Shown in pieces: positions 8,502-51,520 of a stretch of DNA of 64,000 bases (position 1 is its first letter; every line of letters begins with the position of its first letter). Both the position numbers and the translations under genes were made by a program. The notes beneath the pieces were generated by a model. The model did not search any database. It was not told where the DNA came from and saw nothing but the letters and a program-made list of their open reading frames with translations. This DNA comes from Scyliorhinus canicula (lineage: Eukaryota), in the NCBI RefSeq assembly GCF_902713615.1, contig NC_052158.1, positions 17,914,546-17,978,545 on the forward strand. Direction: 5' to 3'.

Positions 8502-10273
8502 CTCGGAAGAATCAGCGCTCGCTGTTTTTCACAGCGACCGCCGACTCTCCGACCCGGATGGGCCGAGCGGCCGGCCGTTTGCGACCGTTTCACGTCGGCG
8601 GCAAACACACCTGGTCGCTGCCGTCGTGAAAACGCCGTAAGATGCCCGTTTGGGGCTTGTAGGGGGACTGGTGGGGACTGAGCACCACGACTGTTCTCGG
8701 GAGGGGACAGGCCTGCAATCGGTGCCCACCGATGGTCGGGCTGGCGTCTCAACGGGACGCACTAATTCCCCTCCACCGCCCCACAAGATCAAGCCGCCAC
8801 GTCTTGCGGGGCGGCTGAGAGGGAAGACGGCAACTGCGCATGCGCGGGTTGGAGCTGGCCAATCTGCGCATGCGCGGCTGACGTCACATAGGCGCCCTCG
8901 ACGGGCATTCTTGGTGCGCCAAGGCCCAGCAGTTGAGAATAAAGGAGCGCTGCTCCTAGCCCCCCGGGTGGGGGTGAAACTCAGCCAAGTTCACGACGGC
9001 CTTCACGATTTTTCCCGGGAGCGGAGAATCCCGCCCAGGGTGTGGGCAGTGAGAATTTTAAGATCGAGGCTGTTGGAACCAACAATTCTATGGGACATGT
9101 GCTTGTAGGATTAGAATAGCGGTTTTAATATACTCACAACAGAGCCAGCCTATTAGCCATTGAACTTTCGGTGAACTGGCCGGCTGACCATGTGGTACTG
9201 ATCTTTATACAGCAGCTTCCGGGGGAGGAGTCCTGGGCAGAGCCAAGGGAGACATCCCGTACAACTCGACCATTCCCAGCTACTCCCCCTGGAGGACAGG
9301 TAGTGCAACTGCACTTACAATATAGACACATGTATATACAGATTATAATCCGGTGTGAATCACATTCACCACAGAGGCATTGCTGGGTTCGAAGCTGATG
9401 TGGATCAGTGAGCACTGGGGGGGCTGAAATTGTCAACAGGGGACAACCAGTGTCAGATTCCAGTAGATTGAGTTCAGGGCGGTGACTGACTTCCTACAAC
9501 TCGTCTTCACCGAGGTCCTGGACTGGAGAGAGATCTTTATTCTCAGTGAATTGATGCTGATCTGAGCTGAGTGAATGGAGCTGAGGGAATGGGGAGGAAT
9601 TTCTTCAGACACTCTGTCGCTGAGCTTCCACAGTTCCTGCGCTGTGGAAAGTGGTGATGTCCCATCACCGTCTGTACACGTCCCGTCATTCACTCCTGTT
9701 TTTCTTATAGTAACAGCTTCCCAATCATGTTCTCTTCCAGTTCCAGCATCTCTCACCCTGGACCTGGAGACAGCAAACAGCGGACTCATCATTTCACAGG
9801 ATCTGACTAGTGTGAGGGACGGAAGTGAGGAGCCAGATCGACCTGATCATCCGAAAAGATTTGAAATGAGCTTGTATGTTTTGAGCTCCCAGAGTTTCAC
9901 ATCAGGGAGACACTACTGGGAGGTGGGTCTTGGAAACAAACCTCTCTGGATTGTGGGTGTCTGCAGAGAGTCTGTCGACAGGAAAGCATACATCTCAGAG
10001 TCAGCTGAGAATGGATTCTGGACCATCGCCCGGCTTTCTAGCGGCAAATTATTGAAGATCCCAGGTGTCATCTCCCAGCTGGAAGTGAAAACCCGGAAGT
10101 TGGGAATTTACCTGGATTATGAGGGAGGACAGGTGTCATTTTACGATGCTGAGGACATGTCTCACCTGTACACCTTCACTGACACATTCACCGAAAAACT
10201 CTATCCCATCTTTAATCCCTGTAATAATGACTTTGGTGATAACTCTGAGCCACTCACATTGCTCTCTGGGTAA
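1462..10273 (+). CDS. TRIM E3 ligase copy 1 (RING-Bbox2-coiled coil-PRY/SPRY, class IV; TRIM35/39/69/A33-like), about 468 aa
   Basis: Exons 1462-1863, 2247-2342 (96 nt), 3589-3822 (234), 4612-4634 (23), 4719-4837 (119), 9741-10273. All introns GT-AG and phases compatible (1407 nt). C3HC4 RING CPIC..CGHHFC..C..CPQC, B-box CQEH..LFC..C..C..H..H, PRY LTLD, SPRY SGRHYWEV, LDYEGGQVSFY, LYPIF. Confidence 0.93.
2575..3360 (+). repeat. 69-bp minisatellite in intron 2 (about 11 units); paralogous arrays 16560-17125, 34430-34995, 45510-46255
   Basis: Unit ATTAGATTCCAGTCTGTAACTCACTCCCAGGTATCCATTATTCTATATATAAACCATCTSAACCCCTCG. Confidence 0.95.
4100..4500 (-). mobile_element. Degenerate L2-like LINE RT fragment in intron 3 (all four copies)
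   Basis: DLSAAFDTVDH.ILLHRL motif in ORFs 4126-4620, 17895-18158 and 47018-47224. Confidence 0.7.
4915..7800. mobile_element. Patchwork of old CR1 remnants in intron 5 (minus about 4915-6060, plus about 6390-7100, minus about 7160-7800), shared by all copies
   Basis: MEYNVGKWE, VQRDLGDLVHQSLK, RRLRGDLI motifs, heavily decayed; boundaries approximate. Confidence 0.7.
8015..8372. repeat. About 59-bp G-rich minisatellite in intron 5; paralogous at 26468-26875, 39655-39882, 50175-50348
   Basis: Unit CCCCTTGTCCTGRCTGAGATCTCRGAG(G)nTGTAGGGCTGGAGGAGGAGAGCCCAC, 3-7 copies. Confidence 0.9.
8382..9036. mobile_element. GC-rich non-autonomous TIR element (PIF/Harbinger-type MITE), copy 1 only
   Basis: Ends GGACGCGATTCTCCGCTCCC and GGGAGCGGAGAATCCCGCCC are inverted repeats; 3-bp TSD AGG; absent at about 26882. 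Confidence 0.82.
9071..9373 (-). mobile_element. Solo LTR (303 bp), copy 1 intron 5
   Basis: TGTTGGAA...TTCACCACA termini; 5-bp TSD GAGGC (9066-70, 9374-78); empty site TGAGGCATTGC at about 26911; TATA and ATTAAA on the minus strand. Confidence 0.8.
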
Positions 10274-10570
10274 CACAGTGGGACACGTTTTGGGAGGTCG
10301 GAGTTTTAGTGAGAAGCCTGATTCCCTGTCTGAACAGCTCATGTTGTCCTGATTCTCTGCTGTGTGCTGTCAGGGGGTGAGTGTGTCTCTGTATTGTTTA
10401 TTCTGTAAATTTAACTCAGATTCTCCACCCATCCCACTGTCCCGATCTCAATCTAATGGGATCCATAAACACTGGGCTGGTATAGAATGAAGCAAAATCT
10501 CCTGAATTGTGGTAACTGTGCCCAGCTCTCGAACAATTCATTGTCAATCTTTATTTTGTTTCCTCCCTTG

Positions 10571-10576: not shown

Positions 10577-10659
10577 TATTTTATTTGAAGACGGGACTGA
10601 CACCTGGTGTGATGATTATTGATTCAGTGAATGAGTAGAAAGAATGTTTTTTCACTCCT

Positions 10660-11501: not shown

Positions 11502-12527
11502 GTGTATTTCGGGGTGTTGCCATTTAGGGTAGGTGGGGATAGGTTTAGGGATCTGGGGGTCCAGGTGACAGGGGTGTAGGCGACAATGCATAAGTGGAAC
11601 TTAACAAAGTTGGTGGAGGAGATAAAGGAGGACTTTAGGATGTGGGATACACAACGCCTGATGCTGGCAGGAAGGGTCCAAGTGGTTAAGGTGAATGTCT
11701 TGCCAAGGTTTTTATTTGGATTTCAGATGCTTCCGATTTTTATTCCGAAGGCCTACTTCCGGAGTTTGGTCAATGTAATTTGGGAGTTTATTTGGGCGGG
11801 GAAGGTGCCAAGGGTGAAGTGGGCCCTGATACAGAGGCAGGGAGTGAAAGGGGACTTGGCGTTACCGAACCTGCTGTACTATTATTGGGCGGTGAATGTG
11901 GAGAAAGTGAGGTGATAGTGGGAGGGAGAGAGGCCGGAATGGGTTAGGATGGAGGAGGAGTCCTGTAGGGGGCCCAGCTTCAGGGCCATGGTAACGGTGG
12001 CACTACCGTTGTCACCGAGGGGATATACGGAGAGCCCGGGTGTACAGTCCACGGTTAGGGTGTGGAACCAGCTGAGGAGACACTTTAGGATGGAGGGGAT
12101 GTCGGTGCTAATACTGTTGTGTGTGAACCACGGATTCAAACCGAGGGAGACGGATGGCATGTACAGGAGGTGGAGAGAGGTGGGGTTGATGAGGGCCAGG
12201 GATTTATATTTGGAGGAGAGGTTCTCCAGTCTGGAAGAGCTGCGGGACAGGGTGGAGCTCCCGAGGGGGGAGTGATTTTAGGTATTTCCAAGTGAGGGTC
12301 TTTGCATGGAAGGTGTGGAAAGGGTTCCCCAGGCTACCGAAGTCGCCCTATTGGAATGGCTGCTGCTTCCGGACATGGAGGAGAAGGGTAGGATTGGGGA
12401 CATATTGGGGGAGCAGGGAGAATGCACATGGTAAGGATTAAGGAGAAATGGGAGGAGGAGTTGGGGGGAGATAGGGGAGTGGTGAATGAGGCGCTGGGTG
12501 GGGTGAATTTAACCTGTTGTGTGCGGA
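11502..12527 (+). mobile_element. L1-clade LINE ORF2 fragment; its 3' end lies inverted at about 13558-13757
   Basis: F(R)YLGVQV, GRVQVVKVNVLPRFLF, FIWAGKVPR, LALPNL..YYWA motifs. Confidence 0.85.
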
Positions 12528-12855
12528 TGAGTTACAGACGCATCTAATTGAGGGGTTCAGCTGGTTTATATATAGAATAATGGGTACCTGGGAGTGAGTT
12601 ACAGACTGGAATCTAATCGAGGGGTTCAGATGGTTTATATATAGAATAATGGATACCTGGGAATGAGTTTCAGACTGGAATCTAATCGAGGGGTTCAGAT
12701 GGTTTATATATAGAATAACGGATACCTGGGAGTGAGTTACAGACTGGAATCTAATCCAGGGGTTCAGATGGTTTATATATAGAATAATGGATACCTGGGA
12801 GTGAGTTACAGACTGGAATCTCATCGAGGGGTTCAGATGGTTTATATATAGAATA

Positions 12856-15442: not shown

Positions 15443-18400
15443 ATGGCATCTCCAGATCTCACACAGGAACTAACCTGTCCCATCTGTCTGGAGATATTCA
15501 CCCACCCGGTGTTTCTGGAATGTGGACATCATTTCTGCAGCTCCTGCATCTCCCAGAGTTGGCAGAAGGTCCCGGGAGATGTTTCCTGCCCCCAGTGTCG
15601 ACAGGTCTTCACCCAGAGGAACGTCAGGCCCGCTCGGACCCTCATTAACATCGTGGAGAAGTTCAGAGAGGTGAAGGTGACACAGCCACAGGAGGAGTTT
15701 TACTGTCAGGAACACGAGGAGAAGCTGAAACTCTTCTGTGAAGATGAACACAAAGCGATCTGTGTGGTGTGTGGGATGTCCAGAGCTCATAAGACGCACA
15801 GTGTGATCCCAATAAAGGAGGCAGCCCAGATATACAAGGTACTGGATCACTGCTCCTGGCACAGGTAGATGGGGAAGAGGGACAGGGTGGAAGTCACAGA
15901 GAGAGAGAGTGTTTGTAGAATGTGGGGAGGGGAAGAGAGGGCAGGAGAGACAGGGATAGGGAAGGGGAGAGGGATGTTGAAAGAGGAGAGGGTTGGAGCG
16001 AGTAGAGGATTGATTGAGGAGGGGAATTAACCTGGAGGAGGATAATTGCAATAAACAGAATTAACCCACAGCTTCTACTTTGTTTATTGAGTGTAATCAA
16101 TCCTGAGAATATCTCCTTCTCTACCTCACTGGCCTCACTCTATTTAAACACAGCAAACCCCTCCAGAAGGTGACAATGATTGTTTCCTTTGACAAACCCA
16201 TTTGTGTCCTTTCTGTCTCAGAACAAGTTAGAAACATCATTGGAAACTCTGCAGAAGCAAATGGACCTCAGTCTTCACAGAAAAAGAGAACGAGAGGATG
16301 GGATTTCCCACATGAAGGTAGGAGAGTGTCCTTTAGGCTCTGTGTAAACATCCCTGTGTTTGTTATTGAGAGTGAGTGAGCCCCTCACACAGACAGAGAG
16401 AGTTTTACTGAATAAAATGCTGCTGCTCCAAAGTACACTGCGGGCTGCTCCCTGAACTGCAATATAAGGGACCGTCTGTAAATTGCAGATTATTATAACA
16501 GTGTTTAAATGTCTTACTTTCTCTCTCAAGCCAATCCCATCGATTGTTGAAATAAATCATGTCGGTAACTCACTCCCGGGGATCCATTATTCTATATATG
16601 AACCATCTGAACCCCTCGATTAGATTCCAGTCTGTAACTCACTTCCAGGAATCCATTATTCTATATATAAACCATCTCAACCCCTCGATTAGATTCTAGT
16701 CTGTAACTCACTCCCAGGTATCCATTATTCTATATATAAACCATCTGAACCCCTCAATTAGATTCCAGTCTGTAACTCACTCCCAGATATCCATTATTCT
16801 ATTTATAAACCATCTGAACCCCTCGATTAGATTCCAGTCTGTAACTCACTCCCTGGTATCCATTATTCCATATATAAACCATCTGAACCCCTCGATTAGA
16901 TTCCAGTCTGTAACTCACTCCCAGGTCTCCATTATTCTATATATAAACCATCTGAACCCCTCAATTAGATTCCAGTCTGTAACTCAGTCCCAGGAATCCA
17001 TTATTCTATATATAAACCATCTGAACCCCTCAATTAGGTTCCAGTCTATAACTCACTCCCAGGTATCCATTATTCCATATGTAAACCATCTGAATTCCAC
17101 AATTAGATTCCACTCAGTGACTCAGCCCTTGATGTCTATTATTTCATAATTAACCACTGGAATCACTTTACAATGTTTGTTTGTAACTCACTCCCACATA
17201 GCCAATATCCCATCAAACTGTTCAGCCGGCAGTGAACTGTTATTGTTTGTTATCCTTGCTGGATATAAATTTTTATCCCTATATCCCAGTGGACAGAGAC
17301 CAGGGACACTGGGATTATAAACGTTGTTTATTCCATTCTGTATTCAATCTGTTCCAGGCTGAAGTTGACAGACTGAGAAATGAAATCAACAGTGAATTTG
17401 AAAAGATGCACAAGTTCCTGTTTGAGAAGGAGGAGCTGATGAAAGCAAAGTTGGAGAGAAAAAGCAATAAAGTATTCGAGGACATGGAGAACAATTTAAC
17501 CAAAACCATGGATGAAATGTCTTCTCTTGAAGCAGCAATAAGAGATCTTAAATCGAGGCTGGAGGTACAACTGGCCCCAGAGTTCCTCAAGGTACAAAAT
17601 CTCTTTGTCTTGTCCAGTGAAACATTCCAGAGACTGAGGGCGGGCACTCTGACCTTTAACCTCTGGGTTTGGATTAGGCCTCAGTCTGATTGGTTGGATG
17701 ATTGTCTCTTTCTGCTGTCAGTCAGGGTCCAATGGGAAATGAGGTGAGATAATCTCAGTGTGATTCCTATACACAGCGTAACCACGACACTGATTGATGA
17801 TTGGACTCCGAGAGAGCTGGGCTGGGAACTGGAGATGTTTACTCTGCTGCAGATAGAGTTCTACTGAGATCTGCTGAGGACGGGTTAAAGTGCATTATTG
17901 CAGGGGTGATGGAGATATGGTTAGAGAGATAAGAATGGGAGCGGGTGAGGGTAGAACACCCAGCTGGACAACAGTGGAGAGGCGATGGAGGAGGATGGCG
18001 TGATCGACCGTGTCAAAGGCTGCAGACAGATCGGGAAAAATGAGGAGGGAAAGTTTGTAATGATGGATTTTTTGGGGAGAGGGGTGAAGATGTAGATTTA
18101 AATGAGAGAGAGAGACAACACCTGAAGAGATGAAACAGTTTACAATCCCAGCTAACATGGGGACCAGGAGGGGTGGTTGGGAGATCAGTAGTTTTGGGAA
18201 TTGGATGGAGGGGACAGGAGGTGGGTCTCATGGACAAGATGAGCCCCGAGAGGGAATGAAAGGAAAAAGTAAAAGTTATTTTCTAATTGAAATCTTGGTC
18301 TCTCAATTTTTACTCGAGATTTACAACAAGAACTCTTTAATCTGACTCGATCATATCTATTCTGTTTCTTTCCCCTCAGGATATTCAAGAGCTGTTGATG

Positions 18401-21400
18401 AGGTAAGCAGATATAAAGAAACAGTTTTGTGATGTGATCACTGCTGTCTCTCTAACACACACTGATTTCCAGACCTGTTTTTACAGGAGTCAGATGGAGT
18501 TTCACAAGCCTGGAACTGTCTCCACTCAGTTACCTGTAGCTATCGCCGGTGAACCATTCAAATATATCAAAGTGTGGAGGGAAATGAGAGCAGTGATTTC
18601 ACCAGGTATCATTCTCTGTATATTACTGTCTGTCTGCCATTATCCACTTGATTAATGAGGTTTGACACACTGATGAAATGATCAGAAGATCAGAAGGAAT
18701 AAGAACAGGAGTTGTCCAGCCAATTGAACCTGCTCTGATTTTGATAAGATCATGTCTGATCTGATTGGGGCCTTTACTCCACTTTCCTGCCTGCCCTAGA
18801 TGACCCTTAACCCCTTGTTGATCAACAATCTATGGAATTCGGTCATGAATCAATGACCCAGCCTCTGCTGCTCTCTGTGGTAGAGAAGTCCAAAGACTAA
18901 TATCCCTCTCCGAGAAGGAATTCCTCCTCATCTCTGTCTTCAATAGAGGCCCCTTCATTTGATGCTGTGTCACCTACACCTCGATTGGCCCAGAGATCAA
19001 ACATCCTCCCAGCATCTACCCTGGTGAAGGAATCCCCTCATAATGTTATGTTTCAATAAGACAACCTCTTAGTCTTCTAAACTCCAGTGAGTACAGACCA
19101 ACCAGCTCAACCTTTCCCCATAAGGCAATCCCTTCATCCCAGGAATCAGCCCAGTGAACCTTCTCTGAACTCTGTCCAATGAGAATCTCTCCCTCCTGAT
19201 GTATGGAGATCAGATCTGAACACAGTACTCAAGCTGCAGTCTCACCAATCCCCTGTAAAGTTGGAGCAAGTCTTCCCTACTTTACACTCCATCCCTTCTC
19301 CAATAAAGGCCAACATTCCATTTGTTTCCTCATTCCTTGCTGCACCTGGACACTAGCTTTTAGTGATTGATGTACAAGGTCCCCCAGATCCCTCTGTACT
19401 GCAGCATTCTGCTGTCTCTTTCTATTGAAATAATTTGCTGCTTTTCTATTCTTCCTGCCAAGGTGGACAACCTCCCATTTTCCCACATTATACTCCATCT
19501 GCTAAATCTTTGTCCACTCATTTAACCGGTCTATATCCCTCCGCAGACACTTTGTATCCACCTCACAACTTCCCGAACTCACTTTGTGGCATCAGAAAAT
19601 TTAGCTTCTGTACATTGGGTTTCTTCATCAAATCAGGAATATTGATCATAAATAGATGTATCCCCATCACTAATCAGTAATCTCGGGAATTTGGAAACAT
19701 CACAACCAATGCATCCACTTTCTCTCCAGCCCCTCCTTTAAAATCCTGGGATGCAGGACATCAGGTCCAGGGGACAAGTTGTCTTTAATTTCATTGGTTT
19801 TCCAGACACTTTTTCTCTCGTGATCATGATTTTTTTAAGTTTATCCCTCCCTTTCCCTTCCTGCTTTTCCCCAACACTGGATGAACCCAGGTGTTGTTCT
19901 CTGTATATTGTTGGGTATTTTTCTCGCCCCAGGTTATAAGGAAACATTTATTTGATGATGTTTTGACATTTCTAAGGGACATTGCCAGACCTCAGCACAG
20001 AGCACCGATTGCCCCCCACATGCCCTGTTGCGAAGACTGATACTCTTCCCCTCACGCCGTACACCAGTCACCATGACTACATTCTGTCCCCTTCTGTGGC
20101 CAAGGACAGGAACTCCCAACTTAGGCAGACATCACCTTCTGTCTCTTCCTCAGCACTTTGCCTTGCTGTGAATGGAATTCAGTTCAGAGAAGTGTGAGGT
20201 TAATGTATTGGGAGAGTGAAGATATGACAAGGGAATAGACAATAAGTGGAAAGATAGTGAGAGTTGTGGAGGAACAGAGGGAGCTTTGAATTTATGTCCA
20301 CAGATTCAGGACAGGTGGATAAAGTGGTGAAGATAACACACCGGATATTTTCCTGACTGATCACGGAATAGAAAATAAGAGCAGAGAGGTAATGTAGGAA
20401 CTTTATTAAACACTAGTTAGTCTACAACTAGAGTACTTTATATCTTTCTGGTCAGTGTGCTGGAGAGGTTACCGAGGAGATTAATGAGGGTGTTGGATGG
20501 ATCAGAGAACTTGAGTTCTGAGTTATGATTGGATAGATTGGGATTGTTTTCTTTCGATCCGAGAAGGCTGAGGGGAGATTTAATTGATGTGTATAAAATT
20601 AGGAATGTCCTGAGTGGAAAGGAAGCCCTGAGTTCCATTATCTCGGGATCCATGATCAGGGAGAGTAGATACAGGGTAAGGGGGAGGAGAGTGAAAGGGG
20701 ATTATTTTCACTCAGGGCGTGGTCTGGATCTGGGAAAGGAAGATTGAGGCAGAAACACTCGTCACATTTATAAAGTAATCAGATCAACACTAAAGGTGCC
20801 GACAGGGTTACGGAGCAGGAACTGGAAACCGGGATTGGGCTGGAGAATTAATTTGCAGCCGAATCAGGTTGGTCTGGAATTCCCTTTTTCTGTGAATCCC
20901 AGAATGTTTACAAAACAGGAGGAAACCAATCGGCCCATTGCGTTCCTGGTAGCCCGTTGCAAGATCAACTCCCCAGGGCCGTTCCTTCACCTTTTCTCTG
21001 TAGCTCTGCAGATTATATAGATACATAGAAGCAGGAGGAGGCCTTTTGGCCCTTCAAGCCTGGTCCGCCATTCATCATGGTCATGGCTGATCATCCAACT
21101 CAATAGCCTAATCCTGCTTTCGCCCCATAGCCTTTATAACATTATCCCCAAGTGCCCTAGCCACCTTTTGAATATATTCAATGTTTTAGCATCAACTAGT
21201 TCCTGTGGTAATGAATTCCACAGGCTCAGCACTCTCTGGGTGAAGAACTGTCTCCTTGTATCTGTCCGAAATGGTTGATCCTGAATCTTCAGACTGTGAC
21301 CCTGGTTCTGGACACACCCATCATTGGTAACATCTTCCATCCATCTACCCTGTCTAGTCCTATTAGAATTTTATAAGTCTCCATGAGATCCCCCCCTCGT

Positions 21401-27400: not shown

Positions 27401-27811
27401 GATGAATGTGTGTATGTGTTGAGTTCCCAGAGTTTCACATCAGGGAGACACTACTGGGAGGTGGGTCTTGGAAACAAACCTCTCTGGGTTGTGGGTGTCT
27501 GCAGAGAGTCTGTCAACAGGAAAGGAAATATCACAGAGTCACCTGAGAATGGATTCTGGGTCATCGCTCGGCTTCCTGACTGCAAATCATTGAAAATCCC
27601 GGATGCCATCTCGCAGCTGAAAGTGAATCCCCGGAAGTTGGGAATTTACCTGGATTATGAGGGAGGACAGGTGTCATTTTACAATGCTGAGGACATGTCT
27701 CACCTGTACACCTTCACTGACACATTCACTGAGAAACTCTATCCCATCTTTAGTCCTTGTGTTAATATCTTTGGTAATAACCCTGAGCCACTCACACTGC
27801 TCTCTGGGTAA
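15443..27811 (+). CDS. TRIM E3 ligase copy 2 (RING-Bbox-CC-B30.2), about 466 aa
   Basis: Exons 15443-15838, 16222-16317, 17358-17591, 18380-18402, 18487-18605, 27279-27811; GT-AG, open frame (1401 nt). Intron 5 is expanded by two CR1 insertions. Confidence 0.92.
21015..22454 (-). mobile_element. 5'-truncated CR1 LINE, specific to copy 2 intron 5
   Basis: Frameshifted RT pieces (KSCLTNLLEFFE, GVPQGSVLGP, RPHLEYCVQFWSP); flanked by GATT at 21011-14 and 22455-58; empty site at about 38905 in copy 3. Confidence 0.9.
21904..22032 (+). mobile_element. Short CR1-type 3' tail nested in the CR1 above
   Basis: Ends GAAGGGCCAGATGGCCTACTCCTGCTCCGAGTTCTTATGTTATG; GTTCAC duplicated at 21898-21903 and 22033-22038. 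Confidence 0.75.
22885..25900 (-). mobile_element. CR1 LINE with near-complete but frameshifted ORF2 (APE endonuclease + RT), specific to copy 2
   Basis: CFNARS, GITETW, YYRPP, MGDFN, SDHN endonuclease motifs; RT in 23830-24534 and 23064-23792; AGAACAAAG tail; empty site CTAATTGTGAAATG at about 7686. Confidence 0.95.
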
Positions 27812-39300: not shown

Positions 39301-41014
39301 CCACTCTCTCTCCCTGTCCTGTCACCGTTAATTGTGAAATGATATCCTGTGCATTAAGGTTTAGGTCATTAATTTACATCAGGAAAGTCAGAACCCATTT
39401 GAATACCAATATCTATCTTCAGTCTGAACAAGCAACAACTGTCATTCACCCCGTTTCATATCCATGTTGCTACTGTCCTCGTTATTCTGTATATTTTCTA
39501 TGTTTCTGCCTGTTAGGGTGACTGTTCCCCTGTTGCCAGAGACTAGGGAACATACGAGGAGGTTAAAGAGCAAAACCGTGTATTGAGATATTGAAGTTAT
39601 TTCTCTGTCATTTAGATGTCAATTTTCCACCAGGATCACTCCTTCCAGCTCTACAGCCCCCTTGTCCTGACTGAGATCTCGGAGGGGGATGTAGGGCTGG
39701 AGGAGGAGAGCCCACCCCCTTGTCCTGGCTGAGATCTCGGAGGGGGGGGGGTAGGGCTGGAGGAGGAGAGCCCACCCCCTTGTCCTGACTGAGATCTAAG
39801 AGGGGGGTGTAGGGCTGGAGGATGAGAGCCCACCCCCTTGTCCTGGCTGAGATCTCGGAGGGGGGTGTAGGGCTGGAGGAAGTTACAGAGATACTGGCTG
39901 GGAGGATGCCGTGTAGACATTTACGTTTGAGATATGTCTGGGTCAGAAGGCGATGACGGTCAGTGAGAATGGGGTCCTGGGAACGTGGAAGGTGAGGTGG
40001 ATCACGAGGGGGGAGGGGGGAAAGGTGGTTGGTGATGGGTGTATGGGTCTTGGTGGAAGTTATGACTGTGGGCAGCAGAATTTGGATGAGCTCACGTTTC
40101 CGTTTCGGGTTCCACGTTGAAAATAAATGAACGCACATCCAGACTCCCCCTTGACTGTTGTGTACAGGGAAGTGAGACAGTTAATGTTTCAATCCCATTC
40201 ACAAATTGAAAAACGTGTCAACACTGTCCAAAAAATGTCACAACAGGCTGGACACAGGGCAGTGACCGAGTTCCTACAATTTGGCTTCACCGAGGTGTTG
40301 TACTGGAGAGAGATCTGAGCTGAGTGAATGGAGCTGAGGGAAGGGGGAGAAATTTCTTCAGACACTCTGTCCCTGAGCTTCCACAGTTCCTGGGCTGAGG
40401 AAAGTGGTGATGTCCCATCACAGTCTGTACACGTCCCGTCATTCACTCCTGTTTTTCTCACAGTAACAGCTTCCCAATCATGTTCTCTTCCAGTTCCAGC
40501 ATCTCTCACCCTGGACCTGGAGACAGCAAGCGACGGACTCATCATTTCCCAGGATCTGACTATTGTGAGGTTCGGAAATGAGGAGCCAGATCGACCTGAT
40601 CATCCCAAAAGATTTGATGTATACTTAAATGTTTTGAGCTCTCAGAGTTTCACATCAGGGAGACACTACTGGGAGGTGGGTCTTGGAGACAAGACTGACT
40701 GGATTGTGGGTGTCTGCAGAGAGTCTGTCAACAGGAAAGGAGACATCACACAGTCACCTGAGAATGGATTCTGGGTCATCGCCTGGACTGAAGACTGCAA
40801 ATCATTGAAAATCCTGGATGTCATCTCCCAGCTGGAAATGAAACCCCGGAAGTTGGGAATTTATCTGGATTATGAGGGAGGACAGGTGTCATTTTACGAT
40901 TCTGAGGACATGTCTCACCTGTACACCTTCACTGACACATTCACCGAGAAACTCTACCCCATCTTTAATCCCTGTAATAATGACTCTGACCCACTCACAC
41001 TGCTCTCTGGGTAA
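33313..41014 (+). CDS. TRIM E3 ligase copy 3 (RING-Bbox-CC-B30.2), about 462 aa
   Basis: Exons 33313-33708, 34092-34187, 35228-35461, 36251-36273, 36358-36476, 40494-41014; open frame (1389 nt). In-frame 12-nt deletion near the C-terminus. Confidence 0.92.
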
Positions 41015-44394: not shown

Positions 44395-47300
44395 ATGGCA
44401 TCTCCAGATCTCACACAGGAACTAACCTGTTCCATCTGCCTGGAGATATTCACCCACCCGGTTTCTCTGGAATGTGGACATCATTTCTGCAGCTCCTGCA
44501 TCTCCCGGAGTTGGCAGAAGGTCCCGGGAGATGTTTCCTGCCCCCAGTGTCGACAGGTCTTCACCCAGAGGAACGTCAGGCCCGCTCGGACCCTGAGTAA
44601 CGTCGTGGAGAAGTTCAGAGAGGTGAAGGTGACACAGCCACAGGAGGAGTTTTACTGTCAGGAACACGAGGAGAAGCTGAAACTCTTCTGTGAAGATGAA
44701 CACAAAGCGATCTGTGTGGTGTGTGGGATGTCCAGAGCTCATAAGACGCACAGTGTGATCCCAATAAAGGAGGCAGCCCAGATATACAGGGTACTGGATC
44801 ACTGCTCCTGGCACAGGTAGATGGGGAAGAGGGACAGGGTGTAAGTCACAGAGAGAGAGAGTGTTTGTAGAATATGGGGAGGGGAAGAGAGGGCGGGAGA
44901 GACAGGGATAGGGAAGGGGAGAGGGATGTTGAAAGAGGAGAGGGTTGGAGCGAGGAGAGGATTGATTGAGGAGGGGAATTAACCTGGAGAAGGATAATTG
45001 CAATAAACAGAATTAACCCACAGCTTTTACTTTGTTTATTGAGTGTAATCAATCCTGAGAATATCTCCTTCTCTACCTCACTGGCCTCACTCTATTTAAA
45101 CACAGCAAACTCTGCCAGAAGGTGACAATGATTGTTTCCTTTGACAAACCCATTTGTGTCCTTTCTGTCTCAGAACAAGTTAGAACCATCATTGGAAACT
45201 CTGCAGAAGCAAATGGACCTCAGTCTTCACAGTAAAAGAGAACGAGAGGATGGGATTTTCCACATGAAGGTAGGAGAGTGTCCTTTAGGCTTTGTGTAAA
45301 CTTCCCTGTGTTTGTTATTGAGAGTGAGTGAGCTTCTCACACAGTCAGAGAGAGTTTTACTGAATAAAATGCTGCTGCTCCAAAGTACACTGCGGGCTGC
45401 TCCCTGAACTGCAATATAAGGGACCGTCTGTAAATTGCAGATTATGATAACAATGTGAAAATGTCTTAATTTCTCTCTCAAGCCAATCCTATCGATTGAT
45501 GCAATAAATCTTGTCTTTAACTCATTCCCGGGGATCTATTATTCTATATATAAACCATCTGAACCCCTCGATTATATTCCAGTCTGTAACTCACACCCAA
45601 GTATGCATGGGGCAGCACGGTAGGATGATGGTTAGCATAAAAGCTTCACAGCTCCAGGGTCCCAGGTTCGATTCCCGGCTGGGTCACTGTCTGTGTGGAG
45701 TCTGCACCGTGTGTGCGTGGGTTTCCTCCGGGTGCTCCGGTTTCCTCCCACGGTCCAAAGACGTGCGGGTTAGGTGGATTGGCCATGCTAAATTGCCCGT
45801 AGTGTCCTTAAAAGTAAGGTTAAGCAGGGGGGTTGTTGGGTTACGGGTATAGGGTGGATACGTGGGTTTGAGTAGGGTGATCATTGCTCGGCACAACATC
45901 GAGGGCCGAGGGGCCTGTTCTGTGCTGTACTGTTCTATGTTCTATGTATATATAAACCAACTGAACCCCTCGATTAGATTCTAGTCTGTAACTCACTCCC
46001 AGGTATCCATTATTCTATATATAAACCATCTGAACCCTTCGATTAGATTCCAGTCTGTAACTCAGTCCCAGGTATCTATTATTCTATATATAAAGCATCT
46101 GAACCCCTTGATTAGATTCCAGTCTGTAACTCACTCCGAGGTATCCATTATTCTATACATAAACCATCTGAACCCCTCGATTAGATTCCAGTCTGTAACT
46201 CACTCCCAGGTATCCATTCTGAATTCCTCAATTAGATTCCACTTAGTGACTCAGCCCTTGATGGATATTATTTCATAATTAACCACTGGAATCACTTTAC
46301 AATGTTTGTTTGTTTGTAACATAACCAAAGTTCCATCTAACTGTTCAGCAGACAGTGGGCTGTTATTATTTGTTATCCTTGCTGGATATAAATTTTTATC
46401 CCTATATCCCAGTGGACAGAGACCAGGGGCACTGGGATTATAAACGTTGTTTATTCCGTTCTGTATTCAATCTGTTCCAGGCTGAAGTTGACAGACTGAG
46501 AAATGAAATCAACAGTGAATTTGAAAAGATGCACAGGTTCCTGTTTAAGAAGGAGGAGCTGATGAAAGCAGAGTTGGAGAGAAAATGCAATAAAATATTT
46601 GAGGAAATGGAGAACAATTTAACCAAAACCATGAATGAAATGTCTTCTCTTGAAGGAGCAATAAGAGATCTTAAATCGAGGCTGGAGGTACAACTGGCCC
46701 CAGAGTTCCTCAAGGTACAAAATCTCTTTGTCTTGTGCAGTGAAACATTCCAGAGACTGAGGGTGGGCACTCTGACCTTTAACCTCTGGGTTTGGATTAG
46801 GCCTCAGTCTGATTGGTTGGATGATTGTCACTTTGTGCTGTCAGTAAGGGTCCACTGGGAAATGAGGTGAGATAATCTCAGTTTGATTCCTATACACAGC
46901 GTAACCACGGCACTGATTGATGATTGGACTCCGAGAGAGCTGGGCTGGGAACTGGAGATGTTTACACTGCTGCAGATGGAGTTCTACTGAGATCTGATGA
47001 GGACGGGTTAAAGTGCATTATTGCAGGGGTGATGGAGCTATGGTTAGAGAGATAAGAATGGGAGCGGGTGAGGGTAGAACGCCCAGCTGGACAACAGTGG
47101 AGAGGAGATGGAGGAGGATGGTGTGATCGACTGTGTCAAAGGCTGCAGGCAGACCGAGAATAATGAGGAGGGAAAGTTTGTTAGGATGGGTTTTTTGGGG
47201 AGAGGGGTGAAGATGTAGATTCAAATGAGAGAGAGAGACAACATCTGAAGAGATGAAACAATTTCAAATCCCAGCTAACATGGGGACTAGGAGGGGAGGT

Positions 47301-50300
47301 TGGGAGATCAGTAGTTTTTGGGAATAGGATGGAGGGGACAGGAGGTGGGTCTGATGGATAAGATGAGCTCCGAGAGGGAATGAAAGGAAAGTAAAAGTTA
47401 TTTTCTAATTGAAATCTTGGTCTAATGATTCTGTCCCTCTTCATAATTTCTACTCGAGATTTACAACAAGAACTCTTTAATCTGACTCGATCATATCTAT
47501 TCTGTTTCTTTCCCATCAGGATATTCAAGAGCTGTTGATGAGGTAAACAGATAAAAAGAAACAGTTTTGTGATGTGATCACTGCTGTCTCTCTAACACAC
47601 ACTGATTTCCAGACCTGTTTTTACAGGAGTCAGATGGAGTTTTACAAGCCTGGAACTGTCTCCACTCAGTTACCTGTGGCTATCGCTGGTGAACCAGTCA
47701 AATACATCAAAGTGTGGAGGGAAATGAGAGCAGTGATTTCACCAGGTATCATTCTCTGTATATTACTATCTCCCTGCTGTTATCCACATGATTAATGAGG
47801 TTTGACACACTGATGAAATGATCAGAAGATCAGGAATAAGAACAGGAGTGGTCCAGCCCAGTGAACCTGCTCTGATTTTTGATAAGATCATGTCTGATCT
47901 AATTTGGGCCTTTACTCCACTTTCCTGCCTGTCCCAGATGACCCTTAACCCCCTTGCTGATCAACAGTCTATGGAACTCGATCATGAATCAATGACCCAA
48001 CCTCTGCTGCTCTCTGTGGTACAGAATTCCAAAGACTAATATCCCTCTCCGAGAAGGAATTCCTCCTCATCTCTGTCTTCAATAGAGGCCCCTTCATTTG
48101 ATGCTGTGTCACCGACACCTCGATTGTCCCAGAGATCAAGCATCCTCCCAGCATCTACCCTGGTGAAGGAATCCCCTCAGAATGTTATGTTTCTATAAGA
48201 TAACCTCTTATTCTTCTAAACTCCAGTGAGTACAGACCCATCACTGATCAGTAATCTCGGGAATTTGCAAAGATTACAACCTATGCATCCACTTTCTCGC
48301 CAGCCCCTCCTTTAACATCCTGGGATGCAGGACATCAGGTCCAGGGGACGAGTTGTCTTTAATCCCATCGCTTTTCCAGATACTTTTTCTCTGATGATCA
48401 TGATTGTTTTAAGTTTATCCCTCCCTTTCCTTCCTGCTTTTCCCCAACACTGGATGACCCCAGCTGTTGTTCTCTGTATATTGTTGGGTATTTCTCTGTC
48501 CCCAGATTATAAGAAAACATTTATTTAATGATATTGCCAGTCCTCAGCACAGAGCTCCGATTGGTCCCCACATGCCCCGTTGCTAAGACTGATACTCTTC
48601 CCCTCACTCCATATACCAGTTACCATGACTACATTCTGTCCCCTTCTGTGACCCAAGGACAGGAACTCCCAACCTAGGCAGACTTCACCTTCTGTCTCTT
48701 CCTCAGGATTTTGTCTTGCAGTTCAGAGAAGTGTGAGGTTAATGTATTGGGAGGGGGAAGATGTGGCAAGGGAATAGACAATAAGTGGTAAGATAGTGAG
48801 AGGTGTGGAGGAACAGAGGCAGATTTGAGTTTATCTCCACAGATTCAGGACAGGTGGATAAAGTGGTGACGATAACACACCGGATATTTTGCAGTCCTGG
48901 CCAAGGAATAGAGAATAAGAGCAGGGATGTAATGTCAGAACTTTATTAAACACGAGTTAGTCTACAACTAGAGTACTTTATATCTTTCTGATCAGTGTGC
49001 TGGTGAGGTTACCAAGGAGATTAATGAGGGTGTTGGCTGGTTCAGAGAACTTGAGTTCTGCGTTATGATTGGATAGATTGGGGTTGTTTTCATTGGATCA
49101 GAGGAGGCTGAGGGGAGATTTAATTGAGGTGTATAAAATTAGGAGTGTCCAGATAGAGTGGAAAGGAAATCCCGAGTCCCATTGCCTCGGGGTCCCTGAT
49201 CAGGGAGAATAGATACAGGATAAGAGGGAGGAGGGTTAAAGGGATTATTTTCACACACAATGTGATCTGGATCTAGGACTCTCAGCCTGAAAGGTTGATA
49301 GAGGCAGAAACCCTCATAACATTTATAAAGTAATCAGATCTACAGTGAAAGTTTTGTAACCAAAAGTGTTATGGAGCAGAAACTGGAAACTGGGATTGGG
49401 CTGGAGAATTCTATTTCAGCCGAATCTCACATGTTGCTCTGAAATTGCCTCTTTCTGTGAATCCCAGAATAGTTACAAAACTATGCATTCCTGATCCTAA
49501 ACACTCACTGTGTGAACAGGTTTTCCCTCACGCTAATGTGGCTTCTTTTGTCAATCAGTTTAAATTCTGTGTCCTCTGGTTCTCTTCTCTCAGTGGAACC
49601 ACCTCAGCCTCTCCAATCTGTGTCCATAACTGAATTTCCTCCTCCCAGAACCATTGTGGTGAATGTTTCCTGCACTCTCTCTAATGCCCTCACATCCTTC
49701 CTCAAAGTGTGTTCCCAGAACAGAGTTGAGGGTTAACCAGTGTTTTATACAGATATAACTTTGTCACTCGATTCTCTATGTTAATAATAAAGCCTAAGAT
49801 GCTGCATTCTTTATTAACCACTTTCTCTCCCTGTCCTGGCACCGCTAATTGCGAAATTATATCCTGTGCATTAAGGTTTAGGTCATTAATTTACATCAGG
49901 AAAGTCAGAACCCTTTGAATACCAATGTATATCTATCTTCAGTCTGAACAAGCAACAACTGTCGTTCACCCCGTTTCATATCCATGTTGCTACTGTCCTC
50001 GTTATTCTGTATATTTTCTATGTTTCTGCCTGTTAGGGTGACTGTTCCCCTGTTGCCAGAGACTAGGGAACATACGAGGAGGTTAAAGGGCAAAACCGTG
50101 TATTGAGATATTGAAGTTATTTCTCTGTCATTCAGATGTCAATTTTCCACCAGGATCACTCCTTCCAGCTCTACAACCCCCTTATCCTGGCTGAGATCTC
50201 GGAGGGGGATGTAGGGTTGGAGGAGGAGAGCCCACCCCCTTGTCCTGGCTGAGATCTCAGAGGGGGGGGGGGGGGGTAGGGCTGGAGGAGGAGACCCCAC

Positions 50301-51520
50301 CCCCTTGTCCTGACTGAGATCTCGGTGGAGGTTGTAGGGCTGGAGGAAGTTACAGAGATACTGGCTGGGAGGATGCCGTGTAGACATTTAAGTTTGAGAT
50401 ATGTCTGGGTCAGAAGGCGATGACGGTCAGTGAGAATGGGGTCTTGGAAACGGGGAAGGTGAGGAGGATCACGAGGGGGGAGGGGGGGAAGGTGGTTGGT
50501 GATGGGTGTATGGGTCTTGGTGGAAGTTATGACTGTGGGCAGCAGAATTTGGATGAGCTCACGCTTCCGTTTCGGGTTCCACGTTGAAAATAAATGAACG
50601 CACATCCAGACTCCCCCTTGACTGTTGTGTACAGAGCAGTGAGACAGTTAATGTTTCAATCCCATTCACAAATTGAAAAACGTGTCAACACTGTCCAAAA
50701 AATGTCACTACAGGCTGGACACAGGGCAGTGACCGACTTCCTACAACTTGTCTTAACCGAGGTCCTGTACTGGAGAGAGATCTTTATTCTCAGTGAATTG
50801 ATGATGATCTGTGCTGGGTGAATGGAGCTGAGGGAATGGGGAGGAATTTCTTCAGACACTCTGTCCCTGAGCTTCCACAGTTCCTGGGCTGAGGAAAGTG
50901 GTGATGTCCCATCACCGTCTGTTCACGTCTCATCATTCACTCCTGTTTTTCTTATAGTAACAGCTTCCCAATCATGTTCTCTTCCAGTTCCAACATCTCT
51001 CACCCTGGACACAGAGACAGCAAATGACGGACTCATCATTTCCCAGGATCTGACTAGTGTGAGGTACAGAAATGAGCAGCAACCTCGACCTGATCATCCT
51101 AAAAGATTTGATAAAAACTTAGATGTTTTGAGCTCTCAGAGTTTCACATCAGGGAGACACTACTGGGAGGTGGGTCTTGGAAACAAACCTCACTGGATTT
51201 TGGGTGTCTGCAGAGAGTCTGTCAACAGGAAAGGAAACATCACAGAGTCACCTGAGAATGGATTCTGGGTCATCGCCCGGTTTCCTGACTGCAAATCATT
51301 GAAATTCCTGGATGTCATCTCCCAGCGGAAAGTGAAACCCCGGAAGTTGGGAATTTACCTGGATTATGAGGGAGGACAGGTATCATTTTACGATGCTGAG
51401 GACATGTCTCACCTGTACACCTTCACTGACACATTCACTGAGAAACTCTATCCCATCTTTAATCCCTGTAATAATAACTCTGGTAATAACTCTGAGCCAC
51501 TCACACTGCTCTCTGGGTAA
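44395..51520 (+). CDS. TRIM E3 ligase copy 4 (RING-Bbox-CC-B30.2), about 466 aa
   Basis: Exons 44395-44790, 45174-45269, 46481-46714, 47520-47542, 47627-47745, 50988-51520; GT-AG, open frame (1401 nt). Confidence 0.92.
45609..45946 (+). mobile_element. tRNA-derived V-SINE (HE1-like) inserted in the 69-bp array of copy 4
   Basis: Pol III B box GGTTCGATTCC; V-domain GGGTTTCCTCCGGGTGCTCCGGTTTCCTCCCAC; 3' tail CAACATCGAGGGCCGA..GTTCTATGTTCTAT shared with the CR1 tails at 1081-1142 and 61100-61155. Confidence 0.88.

What the first reader, a model, noticed from the sequence alone, without database searches (positions are those of the whole stretch)
9741..51520. B30.2 variable loops are hypervariable while RING/B-box/coiled coil are nearly invariant
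By hand count, copies 1 and 2 differ at about 36 of 177 residues in the last exon but at only 3 substitutions plus a 2-aa indel in about 133 residues of exon 1. Changes cluster: SVR-D/A/F/Y; RF-EMSLY/DECVY/DVYLN/DKNLD; NKPL/NKPL/DKTD/NKPH; ARLSSG/ARLPDC/AWTEDC/ARFPDC; PC-NNDFGDN/VNIFGNN/NND(4-aa deletion)/NNNSGNN. Core strands (SGRHYWEV, LGIYLDYEGGQVSFY) are identical. These positions correspond to the v1-v4 ligand-binding loops defined in TRIM5alpha, which suggests positive selection for distinct ligands.
Basis: partly seen in the sequence, partly recalled or inferred. Interest (0 to 1): 0.82.

Follow-up and report, generated by a model that had tools for sequence, protein, structure and literature searches.

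The report
Shark TRIM array with diversifying B30.2 loops
Four neighbouring, transcribed TRIM ubiquitin-ligase genes, part of an array of about 26 in what is almost certainly the small-spotted catshark genome, keep a uniform front end while the target-binding loops of the last exon change fast, as in primate TRIM5 and teleost finTRIM antiviral genes, so this is a new example of a known kind.

Summary
The window carries four intact six-exon TRIM genes (RING, B-box, coiled coil, PRY/SPRY). Copies A and B differ at 3 residues plus a 2-aa indel in exon 1, and at 35 of 176 residues in exon 6. Variable positions cluster in five long loops of a confident B30.2 model (44/76 loop columns against 13/102 elsewhere, p=2e-10).

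- Using 23 copies from the array of about 26 genes, codon site models support positive selection at 12-19% of exon-6 codons (omega 3-5).
- The signal survives recombination-aware partitioning, synonymous-rate variation, removal of odd copies and a small null simulation.
- Exon 1 shows no such signal.

However, synonymous divergence is also about 2.8-fold higher in exon 6 (0.104) than in exon 1 (0.037), and about twice the flanking intron and 3' divergence (0.04-0.06). Whole-loop omega is only about 1.4-1.5, and about 1 in the v1-like loop. Distance matrices of neighbouring gene parts are uncorrelated, and recombination tests are positive.

So much of the exon 1 versus exon 6 contrast comes from gene-conversion homogenisation of the rest of the gene, with exon 6 escaping it. 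This is the known TRIM5/finTRIM pattern in a cartilaginous fish. The scan's first readers noted the same array in adjacent windows.

The parts
1462..1863 (+). Gene A exon 1 (RING + B-box; 134 codons, carries the extra KV)
   Evidence: ORF and tblastn to retrocopy; donor AAG|gtactgg; Pfam RING and B-box on the paralogous copy D
2247..4837 (+). Gene A exons 2-5 (coiled coil/linker): 2247-2342, 3589-3822, 4612-4634, 4719-4837
   Evidence: Splice sites and retrocopy alignment
9741..10273 (+). Gene A exon 6 (PRY/SPRY = B30.2, incl. stop). Long loops: 9821-9877, 9929-9946, 9968-10015, 10034-10096, 10217-10252
   Evidence: Pfam PRY 5.9e-15, SPRY 1.8e-19; loop coordinates from AF2 DSSP mapping
15443..15838 (+). 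Gene B exon 1 (RING + B-box)
16222..18605 (+). Gene B exons 2-5: 16222-16317, 17358-17591, 18380-18402, 18487-18605
27279..27811 (+). Gene B exon 6 (B30.2). Long loops: 27359-27415, 27467-27484, 27506-27553, 27572-27634, 27755-27790. Intron 5 holds a LINE insertion (about 22.0-25.9 kb, minus strand ORFs)
33313..33708 (+). Gene C exon 1 (RING + B-box)
34092..36476 (+). Gene C exons 2-5: 34092-34187, 35228-35461, 36251-36273, 36358-36476
40494..41014 (+). Gene C exon 6 (B30.2, 4-codon deletion in the last loop). Long loops: 40574-40630, 40682-40699, 40721-40768, 40787-40849, 40970-40993
44395..44790 (+). Gene D exon 1 (RING + B-box)
   Evidence: Pfam zf-C3HC4_4 2e-12, zf-B_box 8e-12; closest solved RING-B-box is TRIM21, 1e-30
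45174..47745 (+). Gene D exons 2-5: 45174-45269, 46481-46714, 47520-47542, 47627-47745
   Evidence: Splice sites. RNA contigs join exon 3 to 5 through the 23-nt exon 4, carry the exon 2 tail before 46481, and join 47745 to 50988 with GT..AG
50988..51520 (+). Gene D exon 6 (B30.2, incl. stop). Long loops: 51068-51124 (b2-b3, v1-like), 51176-51193 (b4-b5), 51215-51262 (b5-b6, v2-like), 51281-51343 (b6-b7, v3-like), 51464-51499 (b10-b11, v4-like)
   Evidence: Pfam PRY 2e-17, SPRY 1.3e-21; pyrin/BTN3A1/TRIM21 B30.2 hits; AF2 pLDDT 90; Foldseek TM 0.90 to TRIM21 PRYSPRY; near-identical RNA contigs tile 50995-51521

Best explanation
The window holds four members (A-D) of a tandem array of about 26 class-IV TRIM E3-ligase genes (RING, B-box, coiled coil, PRY/SPRY). 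The array lies on one chromosome of a 4.2-Gb shark genome, almost certainly Scyliorhinus canicula.

Two processes act together.
1. Frequent gene conversion and unequal exchange among the copies keep promoters, exon 1, the coiled-coil exons, introns and 3' flanks similar, at about 4-6% divergence. They also shuffle segments, so each part of a gene has a different nearest relative.
2. The B30.2 exon escapes this homogenisation and keeps older lineages. Its synonymous divergence is about 10%. On top of that, about 12-19% of its codons accumulate amino-acid replacements 3-5 times faster than synonymous changes. Nearly all of these codons lie in five long loops at the positions of TRIM5alpha V1-V4 plus the beta4-beta5 turn.

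Loop variants are also recombined between copies, giving a mosaic of loop cassettes. The likely result is a panel of ligases with a common effector half and different target-binding surfaces.

Shown here: gene structure, transcription and splicing; the divergence pattern; recombination; omega>1 at loop sites. Inferred: that selection is for different ligands (probably viral or other pathogen proteins), that conversion tracts erasing loop diversity are selected against, and that the genes are interferon-inducible.
For: Array and models.
- About 26 exon-1/exon-6 pairs lie on C13 between 17.80 and 18.26 Mb.
- All four window genes have intact ORFs, and 22 of the 25 exon-6 copies fetched (24 array copies plus the C18 retrocopy) are intact.
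- RNA contigs are exon-restricted and spliced.

Divergence (14 genes, 91 pairs).
- Exon 1 dN .020, dS .037; exon 6 dN .085, dS .104.
- Flanking K.052 (5').050 (intron 1).063 (intron 5).043 (3').
- Nucleotide diversity peaks inside exon 6 (.085-.13) and falls to .014-.06 within 120-240 nt on either side.
- Long loops: dN .156, dS .105. Strands: dN .032, dS .104.

Selection.
- M0 omega is .98. M1a/M2a gives 2dlnL=159 (omega2=5.3, 12.7% of codons). M7/M8 gives 167 and M8a/M8 gives 150.
- Each of 3 or 4 recombination partitions is significant (p from 7e-4 to 5e-11).
- Partitions plus gamma synonymous rates give 2dlnL=67.6 (omega2=3.4, 19% of codons).
- The 18-copy subset without the odd copies still gives a summed LRT of 98.
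- A null simulation (M1a on three different trees, analysed on one tree) gives LRTs of 0.9-27.
- The exon 1 control is not significant (p=.13).
- A-priori loops have omega 1.37 (p=.037); strands have .51.
- Column 70 carries 8 different residues with no synonymous change.

Recombination and homogenisation.
- PHI test p<.001 for exon 6.
- Breakpoints improve AICc by about 257.
- Distance matrices of the 5' flank, exon 1, intron 5, exon 6 and 3' flank correlate at r=-.13 to .29, with different nearest neighbours.
- The recent pair g20/g21 has 12 substitutions in 521 nt of exon 6 against 9 in 3 kb of flanks (p=8e-6).
- Array copies are closer to each other than to the retrocopy at exon 1 (dS .036 vs .066) but not at exon 6 (.138 vs .125).

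Fold: AF2 pLDDT 90, TM .90 to TRIM21 PRYSPRY.
Against: - Whole-exon and whole-loop omega values are near 1: .83-.98 for the exon, 1.4-1.5 for the loops, .97 for the v1-like loop.
- Per-site FEL tests with site-specific synonymous rates are weak. The best p is .003 and none survives multiple-test correction.
- The codon models are my own implementation, with branch lengths fixed from M0 up to a scale factor. Only five null simulations were run. Residual recombination within partitions could still inflate the LRTs.
- In the recent pair g20/g21, several exon-6 synonymous changes are private singletons. This could also mean a higher mutation input in exon 6 rather than escape from homogenisation.
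- BLAST-based flank divergence may be biased low, because only well-aligned stretches are counted.
- No ligand, induction or activity data exist.
Confidence: 0.75

Rival explanations
1. No positive selection. Exon 6 is an older or less homogenised segment whose loops evolve nearly neutrally (relaxed constraint), while gene conversion keeps the 5' exons alike. The omega>1 class would be an artefact of recombination, multi-nucleotide cassette replacement and synonymous-rate variation.
For: - dS in exon 6 is 2.8 times that of exon 1 and about twice the flank K.
- Whole-exon omega is .83-.98. The v1-like loop has omega .97 with a raised synonymous rate.
- Recombination is demonstrable.
- Ignoring it inflates the LRT up to 27 in simulation.
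- FEL per-site support is weak.
Against: - The LRT stays at 67.6 (p=2e-15) with partitions and synonymous-rate variation, and stays significant in every partition and in a cleaned 18-copy set.
- The observed single-tree LRT of 159 far exceeds the simulated null of 0.9-27.
- Loop dN (.156) exceeds both exon-6 dS (.105) and flank K (.04-.06).
- Eleven top sites have dN .72 against dS .24, although those sites were chosen from the same data.
- Strands in the same exon are constrained (omega .3-.5).
Confidence: 0.13
2. Exon 6 receives an unusually high mutational input. This could be a local mutation hotspot or templated patch conversion from diverged donors. It would raise synonymous and non-synonymous change together, with selection only filtering the core strands.
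For: - Synonymous divergence is raised throughout exon 6, in strands as well as loops.
- The diversity peak ends at the exon borders.
- In the recent pair g20/g21, four synonymous exon-6 changes are private (three) or nearly private (one) to one copy.
- A 29-nt v1 cassette differs at most positions from the common form and is shared by three otherwise different copies.
Against: - No donor for the divergent cassette exists elsewhere in the genome at 3 or fewer mismatches.
- A hotspot does not explain dN>dS at loop sites, or omega of .3-.5 in strands.
- g20/g21 also have a 2.8%-divergent patch in intron 1. This fits patchy homogenisation of an older duplicate better than an exon-specific hotspot.
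- The retrocopy comparison fits homogenisation of exon 1.
Confidence: 0.07
3. The array is a decaying set of redundant duplicates or pseudogenes, and the loop variation is drift in genes that no longer matter.
For: Some copies are damaged: stops in L048 exon 1, a TGA in L021, a frameshift in L022, one gene without exon 6, and one partial exon 1. Exon 1 omega is .5-.7.
Against: - 22 of the 25 exon-6 copies fetched and all four window genes are intact.
- Core strands are strongly conserved.
- Transcripts are spliced and abundant in several studies.
- Splice sites are conserved.
Confidence: 0.03

Closest known systems
Teleost finTRIM (ftr) multigene family (van der Aa et al. 2009, PMC2657112)
   Same: Both are large lineage-specific tandem TRIM expansions. 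The RING/B-box part is conserved. B30.2 variability is concentrated in the variable loops. M2a/M8 detect about 16-18% of sites with omega>1. Recombination is detected by GARD, and selection persists after partitioning (PARRIS).
   Different: This array is in a cartilaginous fish. The paper found no finTRIM counterpart in elephant shark. The RING/B-box here is closest to TRIM21/TRIM5 rather than TRIM25/16, so this is probably an independent expansion. Here synonymous divergence was also compared with introns and flanks, showing that exon 6 escapes homogenisation.
Primate TRIM5alpha (and the TRIM6/34/5/22 cluster)
   Same: Same class-IV domain architecture and six-coding-exon layout, with B30.2 in the last exon. 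Hypervariable V1-V4 regions form the capsid-binding surface, and indels occur in the loops. The variable blocks here fall at the corresponding positions by spacing.
   Different: TRIM5 diversification is mainly between orthologues of different species. Here it is among about 26 paralogues in one genome. A fifth hot element (the beta4-beta5 turn) lies outside V1-V4. No restriction activity or ligand is known. Orthology was not tested.
TRIM21 / pyrin / butyrophilin B30.2 domains (solved structures)
   Same: These are the best sequence and fold matches: pyrin 2e-46, BTN3A1 6e-42, TRIM21 about 4e-38; Foldseek TM 0.90 to TRIM21 PRYSPRY in complex with IgG Fc.
   Different: Those are single conserved genes with defined ligands (IgG Fc, phosphoantigens). 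Identity is about 40-44%, so no ligand can be transferred.
MHC peptide-binding exons with homogenised introns
   Same: Diversity peaks in the ligand-binding exon, synonymous diversity is raised there, flanking introns are homogenised by recombination or conversion, and motifs are exchanged as a mosaic. This comparison rests on my own knowledge and was not checked in a paper here.
   Different: The MHC pattern concerns alleles at a locus under balancing selection. Here it concerns tandem paralogues.

Membership tests
Class-IV (C-IV) TRIM / RBCC-B30.2 E3 ligases | N-terminal C3HC4 RING finger | tested here: met
   Pfam zf-C3HC4_4 2.1e-12, zf-RING_UBOX 8.5e-12 at residues 12-52; TRIM21 RING-B-box 1e-30
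Class-IV (C-IV) TRIM / RBCC-B30.2 E3 ligases | B-box type 2 zinc finger after the RING | tested here: met
   Pfam zf-B_box 7.7e-12 at residues 84-124
Class-IV (C-IV) TRIM / RBCC-B30.2 E3 ligases | Coiled-coil region between B-box and C-terminal domain | tested here: inconclusive
   Exons 2-5 encode about 157 residues at the expected place and with the usual small-exon layout (96, 234, 23, 119 nt). There are only sub-threshold Pfam hits to coiled-coil families (Filament, Tektin). No coiled-coil predictor or structure model was run.
Class-IV (C-IV) TRIM / RBCC-B30.2 E3 ligases | C-terminal PRY + SPRY (B30.2) domain | tested here: met
   Pfam PRY 2e-17 and SPRY 1.3e-21; AF2 beta-sandwich with pLDDT 90; TM 0.90 to TRIM21 PRYSPRY
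Teleost finTRIM (ftr) | Membership of the teleost-specific clade whose RING/B-box is nearest TRIM16/TRIM25 | tested here: not met
   The organism is a shark: the closest named proteins are from Scyliorhinus canicula, Carcharodon and Callorhinchus. The RING/B-box is nearer TRIM21 (1e-30) and TRIM5 (2e-20) than TRIM25 (3e-17). PMC2657112 reports no finTRIM counterpart in elephant shark. No formal phylogeny was made.
Teleost finTRIM (ftr) | Works alike: tandem expansion with omega>1 sites in B30.2 variable loops despite recombination | tested here: met
TRIM5alpha-type restriction factor | Hypervariable, positively selected V1-V4 regions of B30.2 | tested here: met
   Selected or variable sites lie in the b2-b3, b5-b6, b6-b7 and b10-b11 loops. 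Positional correspondence to the rhesus V1-V4 ranges is by spacing only, not by residue-level alignment.
TRIM5alpha-type restriction factor | Binding of a viral capsid lattice and block of infection | not testable with these tools
   No ligand or activity data
TRIM5alpha-type restriction factor | Orthology or synteny with the TRIM6/34/5/22 cluster | not tested
   NCBI names for the closest proteins are 'zinc-binding protein A33-like' and 'TRIM69-like'. No tree with tetrapod TRIMs was built.
TRIM5alpha-type restriction factor | Interferon inducibility | tested here: inconclusive
   An ISRE-like GAAAGTGAAAG lies about 50 nt before the ATG in genes A-C and is altered in D. No induction data.

The most novel reading that the evidence does not exclude
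The excess of divergence confined to the B30.2 exon includes synonymous and private changes in a very recent duplicate pair, and a 29-nt replaced loop cassette has no donor elsewhere. Together these could reflect a germline diversification mechanism aimed at this exon: a local mutation hotspot, or templated patch conversion among array members comparable to immunoglobulin gene conversion. On this reading it would not be only selection acting on ordinary mutations against a homogenised background.
Probability: 0.07. Interest if true: 0.8.

Novelty: new member of a known kind. Interest (0 to 1): 0.4.

Why it matters
Large, fast-diversifying TRIM-B30.2 families are regarded as innate antiviral sensor or restriction repertoires in primates and teleosts. 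The finTRIM paper (PMC2657112) found no counterpart of that family in elephant shark. In the literature I could search, no comparable TRIM array is described for a cartilaginous fish.

A transcribed 26-gene array in a catshark, on a chromosome carrying well over a hundred further B30.2 exons, points to repeated invention of one design. That design is an invariant E3-ligase chassis joined to a diversified binding domain, and it would have arisen independently near the base of jawed vertebrates.

The array also offers a clean natural system for two questions. One is how gene conversion and diversifying selection partition a gene into homogenised and protected segments. The other is what the shark viral or endogenous-retroviral targets are.

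Tried and rejected
Middle exons and full introns could therefore be studied only for the four window genes.
- Flank divergence from the multiple alignment was inflated by misaligned insertions, with K up to 0.35. I replaced it with BLAST-HSP-based divergence, which may be biased low.
- The first M8 and M8a optimisations did not converge: M8a came out below M7. They were refitted with Nelder-Mead.
- Per-site FEL has little power here. Six sites reach p<.05 and none survives correction, so it is not used as main evidence.
- A genome-wide search for a donor of the divergent v1 cassette found only the three array copies themselves.
- A residue-level alignment to TRIM5alpha was not possible. The sequence is not retrievable through the tools, and I did not type it from memory. 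The mapping to V1-V4 is by loop order and spacing only.
- The 'one surface' test was not possible because no model coordinates are returned.
- Literature searches for a described catshark or cartilaginous-fish TRIM expansion found nothing relevant.
- No RNA run is on record as RNA for the older contig sets. Their RNA nature is inferred from exon-only depth and spliced joints. The raw oligo-dT run X22 gave almost no reads on the stretch.
- Contigs were accepted at 96% identity or more, so the depth sums several paralogues.


Full report
**What is there**

The window is G000:C13:17914546-17978545 of a 4.22-Gb, 646-contig genome. The closest named protein is 'zinc-binding protein A33-like [Scyliorhinus canicula]', at 84% identity to copy D's B30.2. 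More distant relatives come from Carcharodon (69%) and Callorhinchus (55%). The genome is therefore almost certainly that of the small-spotted catshark.

The window contains four tandem units that are 90-95% identical at the DNA level, introns included. An intronless retrocopy on another contig (L013:634-2034, 466-aa ORF) served as a spliced template. With it, tblastn, splice-site inspection and a search for the 23-nt exon gave a six-coding-exon model for each unit.

For copy D the exons are 44395-44790, 45174-45269, 46481-46714, 47520-47542, 47627-47745 and 50988-51520. All four coding sequences are open.

Pfam finds RING and B-box in exon 1 and PRY plus SPRY in exon 6. The closest solved RING/B-box is TRIM21 (1e-30). 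The closest B30.2 domains are pyrin, BTN3A1, TRIM7 and TRIM21.

An AlphaFold model of copy D's B30.2 has pLDDT 90 and pTM 0.88. It superposes on TRIM21 PRYSPRY with TM 0.90.

Contigs of three public runs from three studies cover the exons at depths of hundreds to thousands and the introns at about 0-30. They carry the exon 2-3 boundary, an exon 3 to 5 joint containing the 23-nt exon 4, and a GT..AG joint from 47745 to 50988. One run tiles exon 6 of copy D with 0-2 mismatches per contig. The family is therefore transcribed and spliced as modelled. At the 96% identity threshold, the depth sums several paralogues.

**The observation**

- A vs B: 3 substitutions plus a 2-aa indel in exon 1, and 35 of 176 residues in exon 6.
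- Over all six pairs: 3-9 of 132 in exon 1, 6-13 of 156 in exons 2-5, and 28-35 of 172-176 in exon 6.

I defined loops independently of variability, from the DSSP strands of the model. On that basis 44 of 76 long-loop columns vary among the four copies, against 13 of 102 elsewhere (p=1.9e-10).

**The wider array**

Searching the genome with exon 6 and exon 1 shows about 26 exon-1/exon-6 pairs on C13 between 17.80 and 18.26 Mb. Exon 6 is 77-87% identical to copy D at the protein level. Exon 1 is 93-96% identical in 18 copies. Nine further copies carry a replaced B-box half.

The next most similar B30.2 exon in the genome is only 62% identical. More than 120 more distant B30.2 exons lie on the same contig.

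Of the 25 exon-6 copies fetched (24 array copies plus the C18 retrocopy), 22 are intact. I used 23 exon-6 sequences and 17 type-1 exon-1 sequences, each with 1.5 kb of flank, for the evolutionary analysis.

**Divergence pattern**

For 14 genes with both exons intact (91 pairs, Nei-Gojobori):

| Compartment | dN | dS or K |
|---|---|---|
| Exon 1 | 0.020 | dS 0.037 |
| Exon 6 | 0.085 | dS 0.104 |
| 5' flank | | K 0.052 |
| Intron 1 | | K 0.050 |
| Intron 5 | | K 0.063 |
| 3' flank | | K 0.043 |

Replacement divergence is thus 4-fold higher in exon 6. Silent divergence is also 2.8-fold higher, and about twice that of the adjacent non-coding DNA.

Column-wise diversity rises to 0.085-0.13 inside the first 360 nt of exon 6. 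It falls to 0.014-0.06 within 120-240 nt on either side.

Within exon 6, dS is about 0.10 in loops, strands and the remaining positions alike. dN is 0.156 in long loops, 0.032 in strands and 0.044 elsewhere. Whole-exon omega is 0.83 pairwise and 0.98 under M0.

**Selection tests**

I wrote a Goldman-Yang F3x4 likelihood implementation. Branch lengths are fitted under M0 and then scaled.

- On one ML tree: M1a/M2a gives 2dlnL=158.9 (omega2=5.3 for 12.7% of codons). M7/M8 gives 166.7 and M8a/M8 gives 149.6.
- Recombination is real. The PHI test gives p<0.001 for exon 6 and 0.75 for exon 1. A GARD-like dynamic-programming search prefers breaks near nt 120-165, 210 and 270, lowering AICc from 6472 to 6215.
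- With separate trees per partition, M2a still beats M1a in every partition (p from 7e-4 to 5e-11).
- A joint PARRIS-like model adds gamma-distributed synonymous rates. It improves the fit (LRT 52) and leaves 2dlnL=67.6, p=2e-15, omega2=3.4 for 19% of codons.
- I removed the pseudogene, the retrocopy, three copies with a divergent v1 cassette and one with an 8-codon deletion. The summed LRT is still 98.
- Five data sets simulated under M1a on the three partition trees, each analysed on a single inferred tree, gave LRTs of 0.9-27 and M0 omega of 0.38-0.66. The observed values are 159 and 0.98.
- The exon 1 control is not significant (LRT 4.1, p=0.13).
- With loops fixed a priori, omega is 1.37 in long loops (p=0.037 against 1) and 0.51 in strands. 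By loop it is 3.9 (beta4-beta5), 3.1 (beta10-beta11), 1.46 (beta6-beta7), 1.02 (beta5-beta6) and 0.97 (beta2-beta3, where the synonymous rate is highest).
- Site-by-site FEL is underpowered. The best sites are columns 70 and 163 at p about 0.003-0.005.

Recurrent top sites are alignment columns 14, 26, 44, 45, 70, 85, 88, 100, 101, 109, 163, 165 and 170. Column 70 shows eight different residues and no synonymous change.

**Homogenisation and mosaicism**

All-against-all distances were computed for five compartments of 23 genes: 5' flank, exon 1, the last 600 nt of intron 5, exon 6 and the first 600 nt after it. They are essentially uncorrelated (r from -0.13 to 0.29), and most genes have a different nearest neighbour in each compartment. 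For example, copy A and g01 share an identical first 300 nt of exon 1 and a 5' flank that differs by 0.1%. The nearest exon 6 to copy A, however, is g24 at 7.7%.

The youngest pair (g20/g21) differs at 12 positions in 521 nt of exon 6. It differs at only 9 positions in 3 kb of flanks (p=8e-6). It also has a 2.8%-divergent patch in intron 1 next to long identical stretches. This looks like patchy homogenisation of an older duplicate. However, several of its exon-6 silent changes are private, which leaves room for a mutational contribution.

Loop cassettes are shuffled. The divergent v1 form FVDRVLIALPN(K/N)PE is shared by three copies that differ elsewhere. One of them shares a beta6-beta7 deletion with a copy that has the common v1. 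No donor for that cassette exists elsewhere in the genome.

The retrocopy cannot easily take part in array conversion. Relative to it, array copies are closer to each other than to it at exon 1 (dS 0.036 vs 0.066) but not at exon 6 (0.138 vs 0.125) (the counts are small).

**Reading**

Positive selection on loop residues is supported. The striking contrast with exon 1, however, is also produced by concerted evolution of everything except exon 6, and silent divergence is raised in exon 6 as well.

The most economical mechanism is that conversion tracts homogenise the gene wherever they are harmless. Tracts that overwrite the dispersed specificity-determining loop residues are removed by selection, so the whole exon retains old lineages. 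New replacements and new loop combinations are favoured.

**Comparison with known systems**

The variable blocks match the published rhesus TRIM5alpha V1-V4 ranges by order and spacing. These regions form the capsid-binding interface there.

The overall picture closely resembles that described for teleost finTRIMs. That work reports 15.6-17.6% of sites with omega>1, GARD breakpoints and PARRIS confirmation (PMC2657112). The same paper found no finTRIM counterpart in elephant shark. The RING/B-box here is nearer TRIM21 and TRIM5 than TRIM25. This therefore looks like an independent, shark-lineage expansion working the same way.

I found no description of it in the searchable literature. First readers of this scan flagged the same array in adjacent windows. 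Those notes are unchecked and are not independent support.

**Verdict**

The finding is a new member of a known kind, of moderate interest.

Noticed in passing
L049-L057 (exon-1 loci of nine array genes outside the window, e.g. C13:17978817, 272 nt beyond the window end): These genes carry a 'type 2' exon 1. The first ~100 residues are as in the window genes, but the C-terminal half of the B-box is replaced (…CEVEQRAICVDCWSSEHQTHKDLHIKEAVHIYK). In seven of the nine (L049, L052-L055, L057) the native half is still recognisable downstream in intron 1. This matches scan note s1-240144.
   Followed up: partly
L013:634-2034 (= G000:C18:6650327-6651727): An intronless retrocopy of an array gene lies on another contig. 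Its 466-aa ORF is intact, with a type-2 B-box and the KVKV variant. Its B30.2 part groups with array gene g15 (L023). I used it as a splice template and as a rough clock.
   Followed up: partly
G000:C13, about 1.6-39 Mb (outside the window): Contig C13 carries at least 140 B30.2 exons and at least 115 RING/B-box exons related at 39-62% identity. These counts are lower bounds, because only 150 candidates were scored in each search. Almost the whole TRIM-B30.2 repertoire found sits on this one chromosome.
   Followed up: no
window 1408-1421, 15389-15402, 33259-33272, 44341-44354: An ISRE-like GAAAGTGAAAG lies about 50 nt upstream of the ATG in genes A, B and C. Copy D reads GACAGCGAAAG. An E-box-like CACGTG and GGAAGT lie just upstream. 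This agrees with scan notes s1-228722 and s1-228723.
   Followed up: partly
window 2579-3363, 16561-17124, 34427-34982, 45947-46218 (intron 2 of each gene); also 12438-13010, 29936-30868, 55573-56055 on the minus strand: A 69-nt minisatellite varies in copy number between paralogues. It reads through as ILYINHLNPSIRFQSVTHSQVS and creates long spurious ORFs.
   Followed up: no
window 22035-25894 (minus strand), 22-1047, 59512-62802: A LINE-type endonuclease/reverse-transcriptase ORF set is inserted in intron 5 of gene B. Another RT fragment lies at the window start. Retroviral-type RT, RNase H and integrase ORFs lie downstream of gene D.
   Followed up: no
L014, L021, L024 (C13:18019900, 18107162, 18094295): A 29-nt core of a highly divergent v1-loop cassette (FVDRVLIALPN(K/N)PE, one codon longer) is shared by three otherwise different array copies. 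It has no other match in the genome at 3 or fewer mismatches. Its origin is unexplained.
   Followed up: partly
window 51173-51389: Contigs of three runs join 51173 to 51389, skipping 215 nt inside exon 6 with GT..TT ends. Other contigs match only the conserved core 51152-51411 and diverge on both sides. These are probably assemblies across paralogues rather than a real splice.
   Followed up: no
L048, L021, L022, L059; C13:17994857: Damaged array members: two stops in exon 1 (L048), a TGA in exon 6 (L021), a frameshift near the end of exon 6 (L022) and a partial exon 1 (L059). One gene has an exon 1 with no exon 6 before the next gene, which fits scan note s1-240312.
   Followed up: partly
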